Part shown: piece by piece, positions 229 through 26,542 of the stretch
Position numbering within the stretch: position 1 is the stretch's first letter
How the letters are laid out: each line of letters opens with the position of its first letter
Source of the DNA: Octopus sinensis
Taxonomy: Eukaryota
Assembly (NCBI RefSeq): GCF_006345805.1
Contig: NW_021832496.1
Span: 1-31,559 of the forward strand
DNA length: 31,559 bases
Direction: 5' to 3'
Translations under genes and position numbers: made by a program
The notes under the pieces: generated by a model
What the model was told of the DNA's origin: nothing
The model's database searches: none
Seen by the model: only the letters and a program-made list of their open reading frames with translations

Positions 229-645
229 AAGGCGGCGAGCTGGCAGAAACGTTAGCACGCCGGGCGAAATGCCTAGCGTTATTTCGTCTGCCGTTACGTT
301 CTGAGTTCAAATTCCGTCGAGGTCGACTTTGCCTTTCATCCTTTCGGGGTCGATAAATTAAGTACCAGTTACGCACTGGGGTCGATGTAATCGACTTAAT
401 ACCTATGTCTGTCCTTGTTTGTCCCCTCTGTGTTTAGCCCCTTGTGGGTAATAAAGAAATGGGTATTTCGTCTGCCGTTACGTTCTGAGTTCAAATTCCG
501 CCGAGGTCGACTTTGCCTTTCATCCTTTCGGGGTCGATAAATTAAGTACCAGTCACACACTGGGGTCGATGTAATCGACTTAATCCCTTTGTCTGTCCTT
601 GTTTCTCCTCTCTGTGTTTAGATTCTTGTGGGCAATAAAGAAATA
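229..645 (+). mobile_element. tRNA-derived SINE type A, dimer (full unit 229-460 plus 5'-truncated unit 461-645)
   Basis: Head GGCGGCGAGCTGGCAGAAACGTTAG (A-box-like) and GAGTTCAAATTCC (B-box-like); central GTCGACTTTGCCTTTCATCCTTTCGGGGTCGATAAATTAAGTACC resembling my recollection of the Meta-type SINE domain; AAAGAAAT tail; many near-identical copies in the window. Confidence 0.9.
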
Positions 646-3944: not shown

Positions 3945-4330
3945 TTCTTCTATTCTTTTATTTGTTTCAGTCATTTGACTGCGGTCATGCTGGAGCACTG
4001 CCTTTAGTCGAGCAAATCGACCCCGGGACTTATTCGTCGTAAGCCTAGTACTTATTCTATCGTTCTCTTTCGCCGAACCGCTAAAGTTACGGTTGTCAAG
4101 CGATGTTGCAGGGTGGAGGGACAAATGCATTCACACAAGTATACACCCCCCCCCACACACACACATACGATGGGCTTCTTTCATTCCCGTCTACCAAATC
4201 CACTCACAAGGCTTTGGTCGGCCCGTGGCTATAGCTGAAGACACTTGCCCAAGGTGCCACGCAGTGAGACTGAACCCAGAACCATGTGGTTAGTGAGCAA
4301 GCTTCTTACCACACAGCCACTCCTGCTCCT
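3945..4330 (-). mobile_element. CORE-type tRNA SINE type B with internal microsatellite
   Basis: Minus-strand head GGAGCAGGAGTGGCTGTGTGGTAAG...GGTTCAGTC; CORE-like GGCACCTTGGGCAAGTGTCTTC; internal (TG)n; 3' module ending GCAGTCAAATGACTGAAACAAA. Confidence 0.85.
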
Positions 4331-4568
4331 CTATATATATCCACACATTAATGTTTGTTTCTATGCAAAGTTAAATATAAAAAAAAAAAACAACCAGTTC
4401 AATATAAATTTTGTTGTGTCTTGGGAGAGTCAACCGAATCAATAATTTTTTCGTGTAGTCCATATTTATTATTTCACAACAATTAATTTTCACGATTTCC
4501 ATCAGTCTGATGACGTTTGTTATGCCGAAACAACCGAAGTTATGAGTTAATCTTTCCCGTGTGGAAAC

Positions 4569-4969
4569 TCTTTTACTCTTTTACTCTTTTACTTGTTTCA
4601 GTCCTTTGACTGCGGCCATGCTGGAGCACCGCCTTTAGTCGAGCAACTCGACCCCGGGACTTATTCTTTTTATTTTTTTGTAAGCCCTGTACTTATTCTA
4701 TCGGTCTCTTTTGCCCAACCGCTAAAGTTACGGGGACATAAACACACCAGCATCGGTTGTCAAGCAATGCTAGGGGGACAAACACACACACATAGACACA
4801 TATACATATATATACATATATACGACAGGCTTCTTTCAGTTTTCGTCTACCAAATCCACTCACAAGGCTATAGCAGAAGACACTTGCCCAAGGTGCCACG
4901 CAGTGGGACTGAACCCGGAACCATGTGGTTGGTTAGCAAGCTACTTACCACACAGCCACTCCTGCGCTT
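4569..4969 (-). mobile_element. CORE-type SINE type B, full length, with (GTAAAAGA)n tail
   Basis: Same organisation as 3945-4330; tandem TTTTACTC repeats at 4569-4592 mark the tail. Confidence 0.88.
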
Positions 4970-4984
4970 AAATTTTTGTCATAT

Positions 4985-5160: not shown

Positions 5161-5549
5161 GGTGCGGGTCAAATACATATTAAAAAACCACACGCGCGCC
5201 CACACACACACATGCATACGCACACGCACATACACACACATACACATGAATGTATGTGTGTGTATATATATCTTATATGATAAAACGGAGTTTTTGCGTG
5301 TATGTTTGTGTGCGCGGGCGTATGTTCCTTATGGATTCGAAAACTAAGTTGCCGATTTTGACATATGAGGTATGAAACGATTCAGCAATCTTTTGGCTAC
5401 CAAATAAAGTATGTTTTTTGCACAACAACTCTTTTTTTAGTACAAAAATAACCTCGAAAACGAGGTCAGGTCGCTCAATTTTGATGTCTTTTGGCTAAAT
5501 ATATATATTTATATATATATATATTTAATATTTACCCACGAAAAGCTTC

Positions 5550-5690
5550 TTTTATTTTCCGTTTATGAAATTCCTCACAAGGCTTTAGTCGGTCCGAGGT
5601 TATAATAGAAGACACTTGACCAAATGGCTGCGTAGAGAGATTGAACCCAAGATCACATTGTAAGGAAACAAGCTTCTTAACCACACACTC
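5550..5690 (-). mobile_element. diverged head and CORE of SINE type B
   Basis: CTCACAAGGCTTTAGTCGGTCCGAGGTTATAATAGAAGACACTTGACCAA matches other type B copies. Confidence 0.7.
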
Positions 5691-5695
5691 ACACA

Positions 5696-5879
5696 TGTAT
5701 GTATGCATGTTTGTATGTATGTATCTTTATATAAGCAAATACATACATACATACACACATACATACATACATACATACATACATACACTCATATACATGC
5801 GCATGTGTATGTGTGCGCATATGTGTGTGTATGTATATATGTATTTATGTATGTATATATATATATACATACATACTGT

Positions 5880-7074: not shown

Positions 7075-7505
7075 TGGGATGGTCCGTTGCAGGATTATTC
7101 GTTTTAACCAGCTGAGTGGAGTGGCTCAACGTGATAGGAAAAATTCTGTTCAAGAACACTACGCCTTTCCCGCTTCACAAGTCTAATCCACGATCTTACG
7201 ATCATGTGTCATCTCTTGTGAAAGGTAGGAGAGTCCAGTTTGCTGGACATTGTTGTAGAGCTGAAAAAGAAGTAATTTCTACTCTTCTTCTCCGGAAGCC
7301 ATCTACTCGCAATACCAGAGGACGCACACTCTCCTACCCTGATGTAATCTCCAGGGATACAGGCATCCAGCAACAGGACCTCCGTAATGCCATGATGGAT
7401 CGTGAAGTCTGGCGTAGCATGGTAAATTCCATTGTCTCGACCACGGTCGAACAATGATGATGATGATGAGTCCAACACTGTAACTATTAAGCCACGCGCC
7501 TCCAT
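7075..7505 (-). mobile_element. CORE-type SINE type D split by an RTE insertion (pieces ~7075-7206 and 7470-7505)
   Basis: Joining the pieces restores ATGGAGGCGCGTGGCTTAATAGTTACAGTGTTGGACTCA-TGATCGTAAGATCG...GTGTTCTTGAAC...CACGTTGAGCCACTCCACTCAGCTGG, a tRNA head plus CORE-like domain. Confidence 0.75.
7207..7469 (+). mobile_element. 5'-truncated RTE-clade LINE: RT C-terminus and (TGA)n tail
   Basis: Translation VSSLVKGRRVQFAGHCCRAEKEVISTLLLRKPSTRNTRGRTLSYPDVISRDTGIQQQDLRNAMMDREVWRSMV matches the RTE C-terminal pattern RR.QFAGHC.R...RGR..Y.D....DTG...L...M.DR..WR; stop at 7455-7457 runs into (TGA)n. Confidence 0.85.
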
Positions 7506-8610: not shown

Positions 8611-8611
8611 C

Positions 8612-8780
8612 GAGGCACAGGCGTAGCTGTGTAATTAAGAGGCTCACTTTGCAGATATGAGGTTTCGGATTACAGTCCTAATGCGTGAAACCTCGGGTAA
8701 AAGACTTATACAATAGCTCCAGGGCCGATTAAAACCACGTGAGTGAATTTAGTAGATGGAATCTCTGCAGAAGCCCATCT
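8612..8780 (+). mobile_element. diverged head and CORE of SINE type B
   Basis: GAGGCACAGGCGTAGCTGTGTAATTAAG...GTGAGTGAATTTAGTAGATGGAATCTCTGCAGAAGCCC aligns to type B in sense orientation. Confidence 0.65.
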
Positions 8781-9157
8781 TTGTCTGTCTGTTTGTCTGT
8801 CTGAACATACATACATACATACATACATACATACATACATACATACATTCATACATACATTCATACATACATTCATACACATACATACATACATAACATA
8901 CATGCATAACATACATACAAACATACATACATACAAACATACATACATGCATACATACATACATACATACATACATACATACATACATACATACATACAA
9001 CATATATACATACATACATTCATACATACATTTATACATACATACATACATACATACATCATGCATACATACATACACACATACATACATACGTACATAC
9101 ATACATACATGCATATACATACATACTACATATACACACACATGCATACATACATAC

Positions 9158-9250
<93 letters not shown>
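8781..9250. repeat. (GTCT)n, (CATA)n, (CA)n, (TA)n compound microsatellite
   Basis: Direct reading. Confidence 0.97.
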
Positions 9251-9446
9251 AATAAATATAAGGTCGTTATTTTAAATAGCGATCAAATCTAGTGGCAGTA
9301 TGGGAAGAAAAAACTTTATAGGTCATAATAATTATTGAAAATATAATCAAGGATATCTAAAAGATATCACCATGCTTGAGATAGCTGTCAAAACCTGACA
9401 CTGAAACCACATCAAGTATTCCATACAGCTCAAGGTGGAAAGACAA

Positions 9447-13121: not shown

Positions 13122-13162
<41 letters not shown>

Positions 13163-13174
13163 TATATACATATA

Positions 13175-13326
13175 CGATGAGCTTTTTTTTTCAGTTTCCG
13201 TCTACAAATTCACTCACAAGGCTTTGGTCAACTCGAGGCTATAGTAAAAGTGCCACTCAAGGGTATTGAACCCGAAACCATGTAGCTAGAAAGCAAGCTC
13301 CTTACCACACAGCCACCCCTGCGCCT
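13175..13326 (-). mobile_element. head and CORE of SINE type B with internal deletion
   Basis: CAGTTTCCGTCTACAAATTCACTCACAAGGCTTTGGTC...ACCACACAGCCACCCCTGCGCCT. Confidence 0.8.
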
Positions 13327-13983
13327 AAAATATGTGTATTTTATTCATCTTTCTCAATTCTTTGATTTCACGTTCAAATTCCTATTCTCATCAAATACTA
13401 TCAAGTGACGAATATCTCCCTTGTCATAGCGACCAAGGAGGGGTACTATACGTGTAAATATAAAGCAAAAAAGGATTGTTATAGAAAGTTCTATGAAAAT
13501 ATTTCTAGATCTAGAGTCTAGAAAAAAAAAACAAGTAAAAGAAAAAAAACACAACGTTTTAGTTTGGATAATGTATGTTTTCCAGCATTTGATCTTGTGA
13601 TCTTATTCGTTATTTTATTAGGAGAAAAAATTGATTATATCGATCAGAGATCAATAATACCACTCGGAGTTTTTCTTACCCTCTTAACCTCTATTTAGTG
13701 TTTGTAATACAAATGTGCTGAGATCACTACTAGCAATAAAGATACAGTTGCCCTGTCTGTCTGTTTGTCTATCTGTCTGTTTGTCTGTCTGCCTATCTAT
13801 ATATACATATACATACACAAATACATACATATACATATACAGACACACACAGACTCACACAAACACATGCACACATATATATAGTTCAAATTTACAGAAA
13901 ACAAAAGACGAAGACAGGTGTATTAGTTTAATGCTCGGGAAAAATGAAATATATATATATACGTATATACAGATGTATATATA

Positions 13984-16106: not shown

Positions 16107-17660
<1,554 letters not shown>

Positions 17661-17916: not shown

Positions 17917-17922
17917 ACTATC
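17832..17922. repeat. (TATC)n microsatellite
   Basis: Direct reading. Confidence 0.97.
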
Positions 17923-18303
17923 TATGACTGCGGCCATGCTGGAGCACCGCCTTTTGTCGAGCAATTCGCCCCCAGGACCTATTCTTTGTAAGCCTAGTAC
18001 TAATTCTATCGGTCTCTTTTCCCGAACCGCTAAGTTACGGGGACACAAACACACCAGCATCGGTTGTCAAGCGATGTTGGGGTGGAGGACAAACACAGAC
18101 ACACAATCATATACACACACATACATATATACATATATACGATGGGCTTCTTTCAGTTTCCGTCTACCAAATCCACTCGCAAGGCTTTGGTCGGCCCGAG
18201 GCTATAGTAGAAGACACTTGCCCAAGGTGTCACGCAGTGGGACAGAACCCGAACCATGTAGTTGGTAAGCAAGCTACTTACCACACAGCCACTCCTGCCC
18301 CTA
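17920..18303 (-). mobile_element. CORE-type SINE type B lacking the extreme tail
   Basis: Colinear with 4600-4969, including the internal (CA)/(TA) segment. Confidence 0.88.
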
Positions 18304-18916
18304 TAGCCCCTCCTGCGTCTATATATATATATATAAGTAGTTGAATGAATTATCTTAGTATGGATAATTCGGTTAACCGATACCTGGGTAGCCTTATCGC
18401 TATGGACTCCGTGTGGGCAGTCATCTAAGAGTTTTTGTTCATCTTGATGCTGACATAAGTTCCTTGTTTTTCCTGGTGAGAAGGCGGCATAATGCACCTC
18501 TTATTCCTTCGAAATTAGGAATATGCAGCCTTCGAAACATATGTCGAGAATAAAGGAATTTTGTTAAATCGTCGTTCAACTCCATTCTTTCATTTATTTA
18601 TATATATATATATACATATATATAATTCTGTATTTGTTTGGTTAGGTGCCAATCATATCAACGTGGGAACTGCTGAATCGATCACTAGATATTGTTGATT
18701 ATAGTTTATAGTTTATTTTTTGGGGTCTTAAATCTTCCGATAGAGTAACGACAGAAAAAGCCAGTCCTGGTGGTATTAGAACACGAAGATGAATGGCAAT
18801 AAATAATGGAAAATATTTGAACTATTTTGTTTCCGGCTGTACGTTAACTCGTCCAGTGTTGCACAACGAGATCAAGCCCAGAATTATGTTCTTCCGGAGC
18901 GGACTACATAAAACAG

Positions 18917-19158
18917 AATACACACACACACACACACACACATACACACACACACTACACTACACACACACACTACACTACACACACACACTACACTACA
19001 CACATACACACACACACACTACACTACACACATACATACACACACACTACACTACACACATAACACACACACTACACTATACACATACACACACACTACA
19101 CTACACTATACACATACACACACACACTACACTACACACATACACACACACTACACTA

Positions 19159-19199
<41 letters not shown>

Positions 19200-19513
19200 A
19201 CACACACTACACCACACACACACCACACCTAAACACACACACCACACAACACTAACACATACACACACACTACACCAACACACACACAACTACACTACAC
19301 ACATACACACACACACTACACTACACACATACACACACTACACACATACACACACACACTACACACTACCACCACACACTACACTACACACACAACACGC
19401 CCACACACACACACACTACACTATACACATACACAGACACACACATTACACTACACCATACACGCACACACCTACATTACACACATCACAACAACGCACA
19501 CACACACTACACT

Positions 19514-19544
<31 letters not shown>

Positions 19545-20481
19545 AGCACACTACACTACACACACTACACACACACACGCACACACACACTATACTACAC
19601 ACACATACACACACACAACGCGCACACACCACACATAACTACACCATCACACACACACGCGCACACACACACACGCGCACACACACACACACACACACTA
19701 CACACAGACACACACACGCACACACACACTACACTACACACACACACACACACCACACACACTACACTACACTATACACATACACACACCACTACACTAC
19801 ACACATACACACACACTACACTACACACACATACACAACACACGACACACACACACTACACACACACACACACACCACACATACACACACACACACAACA
19901 CTACACATACACACACACTACACACACACACACACACTACACTACACACATACACACACACACTACACTACACACATACACACACTACACACATACACAC
20001 ACACACTACACACATACACACACACACTACACTACACACATACACACGCACACACACACACACTACACTATACACATACACAGACACACACATTACACTA
20101 CACACATACACGCACACACACACACTACATTACACACATATACACACACACACGCGCACACAAGCACACTACACTACACACATACACACACACACACACA
20201 CGCACACAAGCACACTACACTACACACATACACACACACACACGCACACACACACTATACTACACACATACACACACACACGCGCACACACACACTATAC
20301 TACACACATACACACACACACGCGCACACACACACACACACTACACTACACACAGACACACACACGCACACACACACTACACTACACACACACACACACA
20401 CACACACACACTACACTACACACATACACACACACATACGCACACACACATACACTACACACATACACACACACACACACA
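18917..20481. repeat. 1.56-kb (CA)n tract interrupted by ACTAC, CATA and CGCA variants
   Basis: Direct reading. Confidence 0.95.
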
Positions 20482-20860
20482 CTTTTCTCTCACATCCATT
20501 AGTTCCCCATACTGGCTCGAAGCCATATACATGTAGAGAAGCTGTATATGCGGTTACTGATCTTACATATGTATTTATTGATTCTCAACATTTCTATTTA
20601 TTTATCAGCGTTTAAGATTTCAAAAAAAGAAAAAAAAATTGTAACAGATCGAATTGACCAATGAGAAAGCATCCTTGTCCCATATTTAAAAAAAAAAAAA
20701 AGTTTCATGAATTTTGACTGGAAATGAGACGATTTGGCGAGGCTGTTTGGAGCGGTGACGATTTGTCACGGCTGGCGGCAAACTTTCGCACACGCCCACG
20801 CGCCTATGTACGCGCGTAAAAATTACACATACAGATAGAAAGTGTGAGAGTGTCAGATTA

Positions 20861-20952: not shown

Positions 20953-21391
20953 GATAGATAGAGATAGAGAGAGAGAGAGAGAGAGATCCATCCATACATA
21001 CATACATGCATACATACATACATACATAAATACATACATACATACATACATGCATGCATGCATGCATACATACATACATACATACATACATACATACATG
21101 CATACATACATGCATGCATACATAAATACATACATACATACACACACATACACATACATACATACATACATACATACATACATACATACATACATACATG
21201 CATGCATACATACATACATACATGCATACATACATGCATTCATGCATACATACATGCATACATACATACATGCATACATACATACATACATGCATACATA
21301 CATGCATATACATACATACATACATACATACATGCATGCATACATACATACATACATACATACATACATACATACATACATACATGCATGT

Positions 21392-21422
<31 letters not shown>

Positions 21423-21686
21423 CATACATGCATATATACATGCATATACATACATACATACATACACACACATACACATACATACATACATGCATGCATA
21501 CATACATACATACATACATGCATACATACATACATACATGCATACATACATGCATATACATACATACATACATCATACATACTACATACATACACACACA
21601 TATACATACATACATACATACATACATACATACATACATACATACATACATACATACATGCATGCATACATACATACTTATACATA
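20861..21686. repeat. (GATA)n, (GA)n, then (CATA)n/(CATG)n tract
   Basis: Direct reading. Confidence 0.96.
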
Positions 21687-22197
21687 CGAAGAGTTTCAAC
21701 AATTTTCGCCCACAAAATTCGCTCACCAGGAGCTGGCCGTTCCGCGAAATTTCTTTTTGCCGCAAGAGTTCCGGACCCCAGTTATGAACTCATTTGCATA
21801 CAGCTCAACTATCAAACTAATTTATGAGCGCATAACAGGTGATGGGTGATAAGATAAGGTCGCTTGGGTAAGGAATGACCATGCTCATTTCTCTTTTAAT
21901 AATGCTTGTTGTTCTTGATTGTGTTTCAACCATGGCTGCCTCTGCGTAGTTATTTGTATTGTTTACTTTGTAAAACAGTTTGGGGAGAGGGTTGCTAGCA
22001 CATCACCCTCTACCCACATTTTTCCCATCCACATCTTTACCATAAGGGACCCCAACAAAATCCGATAATCGGCATAGATGCAAATCCATCTAATTACTTG
22101 TCTCCTAAAATCAGGCATAACTTGGCGATCGGTCGACTTACAACACCGTTCTTCGTCCTGAGTTTACTCGGTAGAGTGTGTTTGTTAACTTGACAAG

Positions 22198-22643
22198 AAG
22201 GTGAAAGTGAGCTCTGATTGGCTGTATGCAAATGAGGTCATGGCTGGGGTCCCGAACTCTCGTGGGAAAAAATTTCGCGACCTATCCGGGGCTATAGCAC
22301 AAGATACTTGCCTATGGTGCTGCGCAGTGTGATTGCGGTCAAGGTGAAAGTGAACTCTGATTGGCTGTATGCGAATGAGGTCATGGCTGGGGTCCGGAAC
22401 TCTCGTGGGGAAAAAAATTCGTGACCTATCCGGGGCCATAGCACAAGATACTTGCCTATGGTGCTGCGCAGTGTGATTGCGGTCAAGGTGAAAGTGAGCT
22501 CTGATTGGCTGTATGCGAATGAGGTCATGGCTGGGGTCCGGAACTCTCGTGGGAAAAAAATTTCGCGACCTATCCGGGGTATCCTTGTACCATATTGCAC
22601 AAGATACTTGCCTATGGCGCTGCACAGTGTGATTGCGGTTAAG
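22198..22643. repeat. three tandem ~143-bp units (starts 22198, 22341, 22485; the third has a ~15-bp insertion)
   Basis: Near-identical units AAGGTGAAAGTGAGCTCTGATTGGCTGTATGC(A/G)AATGAGG...GTGTGATTGCGGT(C/T)AAG. Confidence 0.97.
22217..22279. promoter_or_regulatory. dense motif cluster in each unit: inverted CCAAT, octamer, CSL-like and E2F-like sites
   Basis: ATTGG 22217-22221, ATGCAAAT 22226-22233 (ATGCGAAT in units 2-3), CGTGGGAA 22261-22268, TTTCGCG 22273-22279. Motif matches only; function untested. Confidence 0.4.
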
Positions 22644-22657
22644 CTTCTTAACCGCAA
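22633..22657. other. perfect hairpin, 11-bp stem and 3-nt loop
   Basis: TTGCGGTTAAG-CTT-CTTAACCGCAA. Confidence 0.95.
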
Positions 22658-23339
22658 AACCACGCTTTTCAATAATTTCTCCCTCTCTTTCTGCATTAGC
22701 AATCAACTAACCGTATAATGTCTTTTTGTTGACCTTATGTTTCTTTCTGAGAAACAGGCTTTATTTTGAATGTTTCATGCCGTTTCCTTCGTAAACACAC
22801 ATAGTCTCATGTCTTTAGCCTTACTACACACGTATTTCGTCTTGTACTTCTTTTCACTGCTTCCAGTACAGATATTTTCTTTTGTCACTTATTCTCCTAT
22901 TATGTGGAATTTGGTGCTTTTAAAGAAAGCTGAAATCATTCTGGTACCTCTCGGTTTGTTAGTTTTTTTCTTTCTCTTTTCAGAACAAAAAACCATCATC
23001 ACGATAAAGACCTCCTACAATATGAAGGAATTTTAATCTGGATTTAGATGAGAAGTATAAACTAAGGAAGTCGCTCACCTAAGCTGAGTCTTACTTTCAT
23101 CCTGATGCCGAACACTATGTTAGTGTGTGCTTTTTCTTATCTACACATGGAAATTTTAATTTTTCGAAATTTTTTTCTAATTTTTCTAATTTTTTTTTTA
23201 GATCACAGTTTAAAACACGGACAATCCGAATAGACTTTACTTAAATCCCAGCAATAAACCATTAAATGTGTTTATGGGGAGAACGCTACTGAAAAACATC
23301 AATACGTCACAATGACAAACAAACGAGGACGGTATGAAA

Positions 23340-23763
23340 GGGTCGGTGAGCTGGCAGAAACGTTAGCACGCCGGGCGAAATGCTTAGCGGTATTTCGTCG
23401 TTGTGAGTTCAAATTCCGCCGAGGTCGACTTTGCCTTTCATCCTTTCGGGGTCGATAAATTAAGTACCAGTTACGCACTGAGGTCGATCTAATCGACTTA
23501 ATCCGTTTGTTTGTCCTTGTTTGTCCCCTCTGTGTTTAGCCCCTTGTGGGTAGTAAAGAAATAGGTATGAAATGGCAGAATCGTTAGCACGCCGGGCGAA
23601 ATAAGGCGGCGAGCTGGCAGAAACATTAACACGCCGGGCGAAATGCTTAGCAGTATTTCGTCTGCTGCTATGTTCTGAGTTCAAATTCCGCCGAGGTCGA
23701 CTTTGCCTTTCATCCTTTCAGGGTCAATTAAATAAGTACCAGTTACGCACTGGGGTCGATATA
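23340..23763 (+). mobile_element. SINE type A cluster: full copy ~23340-23563, head fragment 23573-23602, 3'-truncated copy 23603-23763
   Basis: Same head, central domain and tail as 229-460. Confidence 0.88.
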
Positions 23764-24059
23764 ATCTGTGTTTTATGAGGGGTTTATGGCGTGCATAAAG
23801 TAGAAATTCACCTTATTTTGTTAGTCCTAGATAAGCGATGGGTTTTGTTAAAAAGAAATAGGTATGAAATGGTCGTGAGAGGAGCTAAAAATGACAGCTA
23901 AATACCCCTTTAATCACACAATTTTTTGTTTTTGCATAGTCGTATGAATTCCCGCATGTAGAGCACACATTCGCAAAAATTTTCTGAAAAGTGAAAGAGC
24001 GATGAGGGGTTTTATGGCCTGCGTAAACTAGAATTTCACCTTGTTTTGTTAGTCTTAGA

Positions 24060-24760: not shown

Positions 24761-24999
24761 CAAAATCAATATCTGTTTATAATGAAGTAGAGTATGATAC
24801 ATATATATTGGGTTGGTTAAATTATTATTCTGGAGCATATTCACCATCTACTTCAATTACTACTTACCTTTTGCTTGGAAGACGGCCAGGCCGTCATTTG
24901 AAGATGCTTTTATTAAATTTTGTTATTGTTTTTGTTGCATAAAATTTGTTGAAAAAACAAAGCCGCAATAATTATGCACCAACCCAATACATATAGGCG

Positions 25000-25093
25000 A
25001 TAGTAGAAAACACTTGGCCAAGGTGCCACGCAGTGGGACTGAACCCGGAACCATGTGGTTGGTAAGCAAGCTACTTACCACACAACCACTCCT
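25000..25093 (-). mobile_element. head fragment of SINE type B
   Basis: AAGGTGCCACGCAGTGGGACTGAACCCGGAACCATGTGGTTGGTAAGCAAGCTACTTACCACAC matches the 4888-4951 segment of the full-length type B copy. Confidence 0.85.
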
Positions 25094-25271
25094 AAAAAAA
25101 ATAATAATAAACACTTAACCCTCTTTATAATTGCAAGCTCAACTATTACCTCGAGATCATTCTATACTTTCTCAAAATCACGCAGTTTACCTAAGCAACG
25201 GTTAAAATATTTAACCACTCTTTTACTACTGTAAATTTGTTTTTCCATAGGCACTTCTGACATATTAACTG

Positions 25272-26542
25272 GCTCTCCGTCGGTTGCGACGACGAGGGTT
25301 CCGGTTGATCCGATCCACGGAACAGCCTGCTCGTGAAATTAACATGCAAATGGCTGTGCACTCCACAGACACGTGTACCCTTTACGTGGTTCTCAGGGAG
25401 GTTCAACGTGACACAGAATGTGACGAGGTTGGCCCCTTTTACCAGCTGAGTGGACTGGAGCAACGTGAAAATAAAGCGTCTTGCTCAAGGAAACAACGCG
25501 TCGTCGGTTTTCGAACTCACGATCGCGAGCCGAATACCCTAACCTATTTCTTTATTACCCACAAGGGGCTAAACACAGAGGGGACAAACAAGGACAGACA
25601 TAGGTATTAAGTCGATTACATCAACCCCAGTGCGTAACTGGTACTTAATTTATCGACCCCGAAAGGATGAAAGGCAAAGTCGACCTCGGCGGAATTTGAA
25701 CTCAGAACGTAACGGCAGACGAAATACCTATTTCTTTACTACCCACAAGGGGCTAAACAGAGAGAGGACAAACAAGGACAGACAAACGGATTAAGTCGAT
25801 TACATCGACCCCAGTGCGAAATTGGTACTTTATTTATCGACCCCGAAAGGATGAAAGGCAAAGTCGACCTCGGCGGAATTTGAACTCAGTCGATCACATC
25901 GACCCCAGTGCGTAACTGGTACTTAATTTATCGACCCCGAAAGGATGAAAGGCAAAGTCGACCTCGGCGGAATTTGAACTCAGAACGTAACGACAGACGA
26001 AATACCTATTTCTTTATTGCCCACAAGGAGCTAAACACAGAGGGGACAAACAAGGACAGACAAACGGATTAAGTCGATTACATCGACCCCAGTGCAAAAT
26101 TGGTACTTATTTATCGACCCCGAAAGGATGAAGGCAAAGTCGACCTCGGCGGAATTTGAACAGTCGACACATCGACCCAGTGCGTAACTGGTACTAATTA
26201 TCGACCCCGAAAGGATGAAAGGCAAAGTCGACCTCGGCGGAATTTGAACTCAGAACGTAACGACAGACGAAATCCTATTTCTTTATTGCCCACAAGGAGC
26301 TAAACACAGAGGGACAAACAAGGACAGACAAACGGATTAAGTCGATTACATCGACCCCAGTGCAAAATGGTACTTATTATCGACCCCGAAAGGATGAAAG
26401 GCAAAGTCGACCTCGGCGGAATTTGAATCACACGAACGGCAGACGAAATACCGCTAAGCATTTCGCCCGGCGTGCTAACGTTTCTGCCAGCTCGCCACCT
26501 TATCGTGAGCCGAATACTCTAACCACTAACCCACGGGACTTC
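25272..26542 (-). mobile_element. mosaic SINE (type D head and CORE joined to type C 3' module) interrupted by a SINE A multimer
   Basis: C-type module 25272-25440, CORE and part of head 25441-25544, rest of head 26502-26542. Confidence 0.75.
25545..26501 (-). mobile_element. SINE type A hexameric multimer (one full unit and five truncated units) with 23-bp TSD
   Basis: Units ~26276-26501 (full), 26162-26275, 26007-26161, 25888-26006, 25729-25887, 25545-25728; flanks ATCGCGAGCCGAATACCCTAACC (25522-25544) and ATCGTGAGCCGAATACTCTAACC (26502-26524). Confidence 0.9.

What the first reader, a model, noticed from the sequence alone, without database searches (positions are those of the whole stretch)
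21694..22683. Unclassified ~1-kb module: hairpin-anchored 143-bp triplication of a promoter-like unit plus an inverted copy
Seen: (1) three units, each ending with the first arm of the hairpin (TTGCGGTCAAG), so the junctions fall at the apex of the perfect TTGCGGTTAAG-CTT-CTTAACCGCAA stem-loop that is complete only after unit 3, with AAG microhomology; (2) each unit packs CCAAT, octamer, CGTGGGAA and TTTCGCG motifs within ~65 bp; (3) a diverged inverted copy at 21743-21804 keeps the octamer and CGCGAAA but lost CCAAT by deletion between two AGC; (4) imperfect direct repeats TTTCAACAATTTTCGCCC (21694-21711) and TTTCAATAATTTCTCCC (22667-22683) bracket the whole. Known: Helentron-derived non-autonomous elements (DINE-1/HINE) have ~150-bp central tandem repeats, nearby microsatellites and a short terminal hairpin before TT, and CCAAT plus octamer typifies histone H2B-type promoters. 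Inference: this is either a rolling-circle or foldback element that amplifies an S-phase/POU/Notch-responsive cassette by re-initiating at the hairpin, or a host promoter amplified by hairpin-induced template switching. I could not find matching subterminal inverted repeats, so the class is unresolved.
Basis: partly seen in the sequence, partly recalled or inferred. Interest (0 to 1): 0.8.

Follow-up and report, generated by a model that had tools for sequence, protein, structure and literature searches.

The report
Split SINE with nested insert, triplicated
The "promoter module" is ordinary repeat debris in an octopus-type genome: an old SINE copy was split by a small inverted-repeat-flanked insertion, and the junction between the two was then copied three times in tandem.

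Summary
The repeats are real: three tandem units (22198-22340, 22341-22484, 22485-22640), an inverted partial copy (21743-21804) and a perfect 11-bp hairpin (22633-22657). The Helentron, foldback and amplified-promoter readings do not hold.

A profile of six copies of an abundant tRNA-derived SINE from this window matches the module four times on the minus strand, in SINE order:
- The head, including the hairpin, lies at 22593-22670.
- The head/core boundary lies in each unit (22282-22335, 22426-22479).
- The next SINE segment (positions 114-170) lies at 21691-21746, next to the (CATA)n array that intact copies also carry.

So one old SINE was split at about position 114-122 by a 533-bp non-coding insert (21745-22277) ending in 62-nt inverted repeats. 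This is probably a MITE-like DNA transposon with a possible 11-bp target duplication.

Later, a ~144-bp segment spanning the insert/SINE junction was duplicated twice, with an AAG microhomology at the apex of the SINE-derived hairpin. The "promoter" motifs sit in the insert's terminal repeat. The full set survives in only one unit.

Copy number of the insert could not be tested. This is an ordinary nested-repeat mosaic of low interest.

The parts
20989..21687 (-). (CATA)n microsatellite, read as (TATG)n on the minus strand. It is the expanded internal microsatellite of the split SINE.
   Evidence: TRF gives period 4 and 176 copies. In intact copies the SINE segment ending GAAAGAAGCCCATCG is followed directly by TATATG/TGTG repeats. 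Here ...GAAACTCTTCG is followed by TATG repeats.
21691..21746 (-). SINE body fragment, profile positions 114-170.
   Evidence: nhmmer with the in-window SINE profile gives E 1.8e-4 for the region and 4.7e-3 for the whole window. Identity to the consensus is 66%.
21745..21804 (-). Its outer end is CGAAATTT.
   Evidence: the repeat finder pairs I1-I5. blastn gives 84-85% over 62 nt, E 7e-12. Identity to the right arms is 83-88%.
21805..22197 (.). Internal 393 bp of the inserted element. It is non-coding and has no relative found.
   Evidence: There is no other copy in the window or in L001/L002. Rfam gives nothing meaningful. Stops occur in all frames.
22198..22277 (+). Right terminal repeat region of the insert, unit 1 copy. 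The inverted-repeat core is 22221-22279. It carries CCAAT (minus strand), ATGCAAAT, CGTGGGAA and TTTCGCG.
22282..22340 (-). SINE fragment in unit 1. It runs from the 3' half of the head stem-loop to the start of the central domain. Profile positions 69-122 are matched, and it extends to about position 47.
   Evidence: nhmmer E 7e-10. blastn gives 80-83% to copies at 4223-4272 and 4866-4911.
22341..22484 (+). Tandem unit 2, made of an insert terminal repeat plus a SINE fragment.
   Evidence: The SINE part at 22426-22479 has E 3e-9.
22485..22640 (+). Tandem unit 3, with a 12-nt insertion at about 22580-22591. Its SINE part continues into the SINE head.
22593..22670 (-). SINE head plus the start of the central domain (profile positions 14-111). 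About 7 nt and about 14 nt are deleted, and the second deletion removes most of the B box.
   Evidence: nhmmer E 9e-7, with alignment shown.
22633..22657 (.). Perfect stem-loop with an 11-bp stem. It is homologous to the SINE head stem-loop TGTGGTAAG-TAG-CTT[GCTTACT]AACCACA.
   Evidence: Folding gives -14.4 kcal/mol here and -14.1 for the family consensus at the same place.
22667..22683 (+). It lies at or just outside the 5' end of the SINE head and is probably a chance match.

Best explanation
The module is a nested mosaic of decayed repeats with no dedicated function. The proposed sequence of events is as follows.

1. A tRNA-derived SINE of the family that litters this window inserted on the minus strand, with its head near 22670 and its body running leftwards into its internal (TATG)n microsatellite. 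The family is also in Octopus vulgaris.
2. The copy lost about 7 nt of the head loop and about 14 nt of the B box. This left a perfect 11-bp hairpin.
3. A 533-bp non-coding element bounded by 62-nt inverted repeats (21745-22277) inserted at SINE position of about 114-122. It is most likely a MITE-like DNA transposon. It may have duplicated about 11 bp of target.
4. A ~144-bp segment was duplicated in tandem twice. It comprises about 85 bp of the insert's right end plus the adjacent 60 nt of SINE. The breakpoints lie at an AAG/CTT microhomology, one of them in the loop of the SINE hairpin. The mechanism would be replication slippage or template switching.
5. The microsatellite expanded to 700 bp.

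Shown here: the SINE homology of three segments in SINE order, the inverted repeat, the tandem units and their junctions, and the order of divergence.

Inferred: that the insert was mobile, that a target-site duplication exists, and that the hairpin caused the duplication breakpoint.
For: Self-blastn shows that the second half of each unit is 74-83% identical to four other places in the window. Those places are copies of a ~370-bp SINE with at least 8 copies in 31.5 kb.

A profile of six of these copies hits the module four times, always on the minus strand and in SINE order:
- Positions 14-111 lie at 22593-22670 (E 9e-7).
- Positions 69-122 lie at 22282-22335 (E 7e-10) and at 22426-22479 (E 3e-9).
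- Positions 114-170 lie at 21691-21746 (E 2e-4).
Locally shuffled windows give a hit at E<=1 in 3 of 20 runs.

The right fragment ends at position 122 and the left fragment starts at 114. Five full copies in the window and three in O. vulgaris locus L001 are continuous across that point. They serve as paralogous empty sites.

The intervening DNA ends in inverted repeats whose outer ends abut the SINE on both sides.

The hairpin aligns arm for arm with the SINE head. Copy 5539-5708 has the identical GGTTAAGAAGCTT. The family consensus folds into a comparable stem-loop.

Divergence is ordered as the model needs:
- SINE parts are 66-80% identical to the consensus.
- The inverted-repeat arms are 83-88% identical to each other.
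- The tandem units are 95-96% identical to each other.
- The left arm is roughly equidistant from all three right-arm copies.

The B-box deletion is present in all three units, so it predates the triplication.

Tandem multiplication of SINE-containing segments is common in this window.

The SINE ORF hits a protein named as Octopus vulgaris. The O. vulgaris locus L001 has 5-6 copies of the SINE. SINEs make up 11.6% of that genome, and TIR, Mutator, MITE and Helitron families are listed for it (PMC13282606).
Against: The left SINE fragment is weak on its own: 66% identity and E 0.005 for the whole window.

The target-site duplication is only 7 of 11 (8 of 11 against unit 2). Several registers were tried, so it is suggestive at best. 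About 0.6% of random 10-mer pairs from the window reach 7 of 10.

No second copy of the insert or its terminal repeat was found. The search covered the remaining 30 kb of the window, 20 kb of O. vulgaris DNA and one 20-kb ENA contig that lacks the SINE and is probably not octopus. Mobility of the insert is therefore unproven.

No octopus genome could be searched. The metagenome and viral scans found nothing.
Confidence: 0.75

Rival explanations
1. The split-SINE and tandem-duplication history is the same, but the 533-bp insert is not a transposon. The left arm would have arisen as a local inverted duplication, through fold-back or template-switch repair, of a sequence that reached the SINE by a non-transposon route.
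For: No other copy of the arm or the internal sequence was found in about 70 kb of available related DNA. The target duplication is weak. Only one arm has the CCAAT part.
Against: The outer ends of both arms abut the SINE exactly, as expected for terminal inverted repeats. The SINE positions overlap on the two sides (114-122), as a target duplication would produce. An inverted duplication gives no reason for the arms to sit at the two ends of the inserted block.
Confidence: 0.17
2. A Helentron-derived (DINE-1/HINE-like) or foldback element amplifies its central ~143-bp promoter-like repeat by re-initiating at its terminal hairpin.
For: The layout resembles such elements superficially: ~144-bp tandem repeats, a nearby microsatellite and a short hairpin before a T-rich stretch.
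Against: The hairpin, the second half of each unit and the microsatellite all belong to one SINE copy. The tandem unit straddles the boundary of two unrelated sequences. No subterminal inverted repeats pair the two ends of the module. The flanking direct repeats are at chance level. There is no Rep/helicase coding capacity in the window: no Pfam hits were found on the 10 ORFs tested.
Confidence: 0.03
3. The units act as a host Pol II promoter or enhancer (NF-Y CCAAT, octamer, E2F-like and RBPJ-like sites), exapted from repeat sequence and amplified. This does not exclude the structural history given above.
For: AGCCAATCAG on the minus strand is a good NF-Y context. A perfect octamer is kept in both unit 1 and the older left arm.
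Against: The motifs are not conserved among the young units. Unit 2 has lost three of the four and unit 3 has lost the octamer. No exon, ORF with a known domain, or known RNA lies next to it. The motif matching is post hoc with short words. No expression or chromatin data are available.
Confidence: 0.05

Closest known systems
tRNA-derived SINEs of octopus with a conserved central domain (CORE-SINE superfamily; Repbase lists OR2 of Octopus vulgaris, cited in PMC5804259)
   Same: The head stem-loop, the head/core boundary, the next body segment and the internal microsatellite of the module all match the in-window SINE family. That family is also present in O. vulgaris.
   Different: The copy here is dead and rearranged. 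Its B box is largely deleted, it is split by a 533-bp insert, part of it is triplicated, and its 3' domain is absent. Whether the family is OR2 or a CORE-SINE rests on my memory of the MIR/CORE motif (CCTTGGGCAAGT...). It was not tested against a library.
MITEs, i.e. non-autonomous TIR DNA transposons (Mutator-like elements have long TIRs and 9-11-bp target duplications)
   Same: The insert is 533 bp, non-coding, has 62-nt terminal inverted repeats and sits inside another repeat. A possible 11-bp target duplication is present.
   Different: No second copy is known. The target duplication is degenerate (7-8 of 11). The termini (CGAAATTT) match no superfamily signature that I can name. The superfamily is not assigned.
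DINE-1/HINE, Helentron-derived non-autonomous elements
   Same: There is a central ~150-bp tandem repeat, an adjacent microsatellite and a short hairpin.
   Different: Each of these three features has another origin here, either SINE parts or a secondary duplication. There are no subterminal inverted repeats and no family-specific terminus.
Microhomology-mediated tandem duplication, by replication slippage or template switching at quasi-palindromes
   Same: The junctions show a 3-nt AAG/CTT microhomology. One breakpoint lies in the loop of an 11-bp perfect hairpin.
   Different: The causal role of the hairpin is inferred from one locus only.

Membership tests
Helentron-derived element (DINE-1/HINE) | Element-specific short hairpin at the 3' terminus | tested here: not met
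   The hairpin is homologous to the stem-loop in the head of the SINE family. Copy 5539-5708 has the identical GGTTAAGAAGCTT, and the consensus folds the same way.
Helentron-derived element (DINE-1/HINE) | Subterminal inverted repeats pairing the 5' end with the 3' subterminus | tested here: not met
   The only inverted repeats in 21600-22900 are the 62-nt arm pair and the hairpin itself.
Helentron-derived element (DINE-1/HINE) | Central tandem repeats as part of the family consensus | tested here: not met
   Tandem repeats exist, but the unit is a chimera of an insert end and a SINE fragment. It is therefore a secondary local duplication.
Helentron-derived element (DINE-1/HINE) | Insertion between T and T without target duplication; many copies; autonomous Rep/Hel partner | not testable with these tools
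   No host genome was available. There are no copies in the window, L001 or L002.
tRNA-derived SINE family of this genome | Sequence match to the family profile, in SINE order and on one strand | tested here: met
   Four minus-strand hits cover positions 14-111, 69-122 (twice) and 114-170.
tRNA-derived SINE family of this genome | Internal Pol III promoter (A and B boxes) intact | tested here: not met
   The A-box region is retained in degenerate form. About 14 nt of the B-box region are deleted. ARAGORN finds no tRNA. This is a dead copy, not an active member.
tRNA-derived SINE family of this genome | Body followed by the family's internal TATG/TG microsatellite | tested here: met
   21691 is followed, in the minus sense, by (TATG)n at 21687-20989. 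Intact copies show the same.
CORE-SINE superfamily | CORE central domain | not tested
   No SINE library was available. The resemblance to the MIR/CORE motif is from memory. OR2 of O. vulgaris is listed as a CORE-SINE in PMC5804259.
MITE / TIR DNA transposon | Terminal inverted repeats at both ends of the inserted block | tested here: met
   21743-21804 pairs with 22221-22279 at 83-88% identity. The outer ends abut SINE sequence.
MITE / TIR DNA transposon | Target-site duplication | tested here: inconclusive
   TGGCCGTTCCG against CGACCTATCCG matches 7 of 11, or 8 of 11 with unit 2. SINE positions 114-122 are present on both sides. Several registers were tried.
MITE / TIR DNA transposon | Short and non-coding | tested here: met
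   The block is 533 bp with stops in all frames. There is no Pfam hit.
MITE / TIR DNA transposon | Multiple dispersed copies with the same ends | not testable with these tools
   There are none in about 70 kb of available DNA. The collections searched hold no octopus genome.
Foldback element | Long inverted arms built of tandem subrepeats on both sides | tested here: not met
   The tandem copies lie on one side only, and the unit extends about 60 nt beyond the inverted repeat into SINE sequence.
H2B-type Pol II promoter (CCAAT + octamer) | Motifs kept in each unit, with a transcribed gene next to them | tested here: not met
   The octamer is in unit 1 only. Unit 2 keeps only CCAAT. No gene, domain or RNA family lies next to the units. 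Expression is not testable here.

The most novel reading that the evidence does not exclude
The 533-bp insert may be a member of an undescribed octopus MITE family. Its long terminal repeats would carry an inward-facing promoter (E2F-like site, octamer, NF-Y CCAAT), as in Mutator-type elements.

SINE head hairpins may also be recurrent breakpoints that seed the many SINE-containing tandem arrays seen in this genome. If so, the birth of satellites from SINEs in cephalopods would become directly testable.
Probability: 0.12. Interest if true: 0.4.

Novelty: already known. Interest (0 to 1): 0.1.

Why it matters
It matters mainly as a correction. A structure that looks like a designed promoter-amplifying mobile element dissolves into three ordinary events (SINE insertion, nested insertion, local tandem duplication) once it is compared with the other repeats of the same window.

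Its practical value is for repeat annotation of octopus genomes. Chimeric tandem units of this kind can be mistaken for new element families or for regulatory modules. The locus is also a clean single example of a tandem-duplication breakpoint at a hairpin apex with microhomology.

Tried and rejected
These searches found nothing useful:
- Rfam at the gathering threshold on the whole window gave nothing. At E<=10 on 21600-22900 it gave only microsatellite-driven miRNA look-alikes and noise. I had considered an snRNA, U7, Pol III type-3 or other small-RNA gene (octamer plus a possible distal element, hairpin, T-run) and dropped it.
- ARAGORN found no tRNA.
- The 173-aa minus-strand ORF through the units has no exact record and no homologue. 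It has no Pfam hit. It is an artefact of a repeat without stops.
- Exact look-ups of two other window ORFs found nothing.
- Pattern scans of the metagenome collection (twice) and the viral collection for the unit found nothing. These collections evidently lack the host genome.
- A literature search for the SINE core string found no paper.

These attempts to gather host DNA fell short:
- The RT-tail ORF was used to collect more host DNA. The hits were short ENA contigs, and the one long contig (L002) lacks the SINE and is probably another organism.
- L003 was not available as a file.

These extensions of the inverted repeat were rejected:
- Extension outward is not significant either.

An apparent similarity of the outer 25 nt of the insert arm to SINE positions 117-140 was not picked up by nhmmer. 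I treat it as chance.

Full report
**Context**

The window is non-coding, AT-rich eukaryotic DNA crowded with microsatellites and short interspersed repeats. No Rfam family reaches its threshold, no tRNA is found, and ten tested ORFs have no Pfam domain.

An ORF that runs through one of the interspersed repeats matches a protein named "Hypothetical predicted protein [Octopus vulgaris]". The 20-kb O. vulgaris locus that encodes it (L001, OX597836.1) contains five to six copies of the same repeat, up to 90% identical to those of the window.

Mostly yes.
- TRF reports a 144-bp period, 2.7 copies and 95% matches at 22198-22579.
- The repeat finder and my own extraction give units of 143, 144 and 156 nt: 22198-22340, 22341-22484 and 22485-22640. 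The last has a 12-nt insertion.
- Pairwise identity of the units is 95-96%, so this is not an assembly stutter of identical copies.
- The perfect stem-loop TTGCGGTTAAG-CTT-CTTAACCGCAA is at 22633-22657.
- Units 1 and 2 end with its first arm in the form GCGGTCAAG. AAG also precedes unit 1.
- The inverted copy at 21743-21804 is 83-88% identical to the units.

Three details do not stand.
- Only unit 1 has all four motifs. Unit 3 has ATGCGAAT in place of the octamer, and unit 2 keeps only CCAAT.
- Similarity of the inverted copy beyond its 62-nt core is at shuffle level. The proposed deletion of CCAAT cannot be shown.
- The flanking direct repeats are matched or beaten by 2.3% of shuffles and by 4.6% of ordinary pieces of this window.

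**The key result**

A sensitive self-comparison showed that the second half of every unit is 74-83% identical to four other places in the window, on the same strand. The segment reads CGGGGCTATAGCACAAGATACTTGCCTATGGTGCTGCGCAGTGTGATTGC.

Those places are copies of a ~370-bp tRNA-derived SINE with at least eight copies in the window. Its layout is as follows:
- A head carrying an A box, a stem-loop and a B box.
- A central domain (CACCTTGGGCAAGTGTCTTCTACTATAGCC...).
- A body segment ending GAAAGAAGCCCATCG.
- An internal TATG/TG microsatellite.
- A 3' domain.

I built a profile from six copies and searched the module. It hits four times, all on the minus strand and in SINE order:
- Positions 14-111 match 22593-22670 (E 9e-7).
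- Positions 69-122 match 22282-22335 (E 7e-10).
- Positions 69-122 also match 22426-22479 (E 3e-9).
- Positions 114-170 match 21691-21746 (E 2e-4 for the region, 5e-3 for the whole window).

Locally shuffled windows give a hit at E<=1 in 3 of 20 runs.

**What each feature of the finding is**

*The hairpin.* It is the stem-loop of the SINE head. The family consensus reads TGTGGT-AAG-TAG-CTT[GCTTACT]AACCACA, and this copy reads TGCGGTTAAG-AAG-CTT-AACCGCA. Copy 5539-5708 has the identical GGTTAAGAAGCTT. The consensus folds into a comparable stem-loop at the same place, at -14.1 against -14.4 kcal/mol. A 7-nt loss made the stem perfect. A further ~14-nt loss removed most of the B box. Both losses are present in all three units, so they predate the triplication.

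*The microsatellite.* The (CATA)176 array to the left is the SINE's own internal microsatellite, expanded.

*The left direct repeat.* It is SINE body, at positions of about 150-168.

*The promoter-like half of the unit.* This half is not SINE. It is one end of a block (21745-22277, 533 bp) that separates SINE position 122 from SINE position 114. The two ends of the block are the 62-nt inverted repeat. The SINE is continuous across this point in five full copies in the window and three in L001, which serve as paralogous empty sites.

**Most likely history**

1. The SINE inserted on the minus strand.
2. It suffered small deletions.
3. An inverted-repeat-flanked, non-coding 533-bp element inserted at SINE position of about 114-122.
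4. A ~144-bp segment spanning the right end of the insert (about 85 bp) and the adjacent SINE (about 60 nt) was duplicated in tandem twice.
5. The microsatellite expanded.

Divergence agrees with this order:
- SINE parts are 66-80% identical to the consensus.
- The two arms are 83-88% identical to each other.
- The units are 95-96% identical to each other.
- The left arm is about equally distant from all three right-arm copies.

I also tried a rough dating with the Jukes-Cantor calibration printed for O. vulgaris (0.09 = 25 My for the TIR/Helitron wave, 0.2 = 56 My; PMC13282606).
- The arms, at about 0.065-0.095 per arm, would fall near the TIR wave.
- The units would be only a few million years old.
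This is an inference that assumes similar rates in the source species.

**Nature of the insert**

Terminal inverted repeats that abut the interrupted host sequence, small size and lack of coding capacity are what a MITE looks like. Immediately outside the arm ends (CGAAATTT... / ...AAATTTCG), the flanks read TGGCCGTTCCG and CGACCTATCCG. They match at 7 of 11, or 8 of 11 with unit 2. The profile places SINE positions 114-122 on both sides.

That fits a 9-11-bp target duplication, as in Mutator-like elements. It is weak evidence, however: several registers were tried, and about 0.6% of random 10-mer pairs reach 7 of 10.

No second copy of the arm or of the internal 393 bp exists in the rest of the window, in L001 or in L002. 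No collection available here holds an octopus genome. Mobility is therefore inferred, not shown. A local inverted duplication is the main rival.

**The triplication**

The junction CTTTCAC|CTTGACCGC (minus sense) joins the inner part of the insert arm region to the 3' half of the SINE stem-loop. CTT/AAG is shared by both parental sequences.

Microhomology-mediated slippage or template switching is the natural mechanism. A breakpoint in the loop of an 11-bp perfect hairpin makes a causal role for the hairpin plausible. It remains an inference from one locus.

The same window holds several other local tandem arrays of SINE-containing segments, so such duplications are common here.

**Comparison with known families**

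Helentron/DINE-1: the hairpin, the microsatellite and half of the tandem unit belong to a SINE. No subterminal inverted repeats exist, and the tandem unit is a secondary chimera. The defining features that could be tested are not met.

Foldback elements: the tandem copies are on one side only and run beyond the inverted repeat, so this is not met.

Host promoter: the motifs decay freely among young units, and nothing transcribed is recognisable nearby. This reading is not supported, although expression was not testable.

The SINE family is probably of the CORE type. OR2 of O. vulgaris is listed as a CORE-SINE in PMC5804259. My assignment of this particular family rests on memory of the CORE motif and was not tested.

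**Verdict**

The sequence features are real, but they are an ordinary nested-repeat mosaic. Nothing here requires a new kind of element or a regulatory function. Interest is low.

The only open points are whether the 533-bp insert defines a MITE family and whether SINE hairpins are recurrent duplication breakpoints. Both can be settled with a genome-wide search.

Noticed in passing
window 280-644, 2145-2890, 23405-23766, 25542-26427; also L001 18081-18182: A second SINE-like family has 14 copies of a 94-bp segment in the window (GAGTTCAAATTCCGCCGAGGTCGACTTTGCCTTTCATCCTTTCGGGGTCGATAAATTAAGTACCAGT...). They mostly lie in local head-to-tail clusters with periods of 94, 184 and 278 bp, i.e. higher-order SINE-derived tandem arrays. 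The segment resembles, from memory, the widely conserved Nin-type SINE domain. This was not tested.
   Followed up: partly
window 3976-4333, 4604-4976, 5539-5708, 13144-13331, 17920-18310, 24995-25095 (all minus); 8611-8779 (plus); weak hit 18847-18911 (minus): These are copies of the main tRNA-derived SINE. Six of the seven clear copies, and the split copy in the finding, are on the minus strand. The bias could mean the window lies in a transcribed region such as an intron, or it could be chance.
   Followed up: no
window 18920-20482, 16110-16908, 20989-21687, 8805-9258: There are very long microsatellites: (AC)~748, (TAT)~268, (CATA)~176 and (ACAT)~114. At least the (CATA)n array, and possibly the (AC)n array next to a weak SINE hit at 18847-18911, look like expansions of SINE-internal microsatellites.
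   Followed up: partly
window 7116-7457 (+): This ORF resembles the C-terminal tail of a LINE reverse transcriptase. It has no Pfam hit. Its 31 homologues are all on short ENA metagenome contigs, up to 93% identical, which is probably host DNA in animal-associated metagenomes.
   Followed up: partly
window 22580-22591: Unit 3 has a 12-nt insertion (TATCCTTGTACC) inside its SINE part. The insertion partly repeats the neighbouring CTATCC and looks like a small templated insertion.
   Followed up: no
L001 13072-13173 (minus): A SINE copy in O. vulgaris has an internal deletion of profile positions of about 85-135. This shows that internally rearranged copies of the family are common.
   Followed up: no
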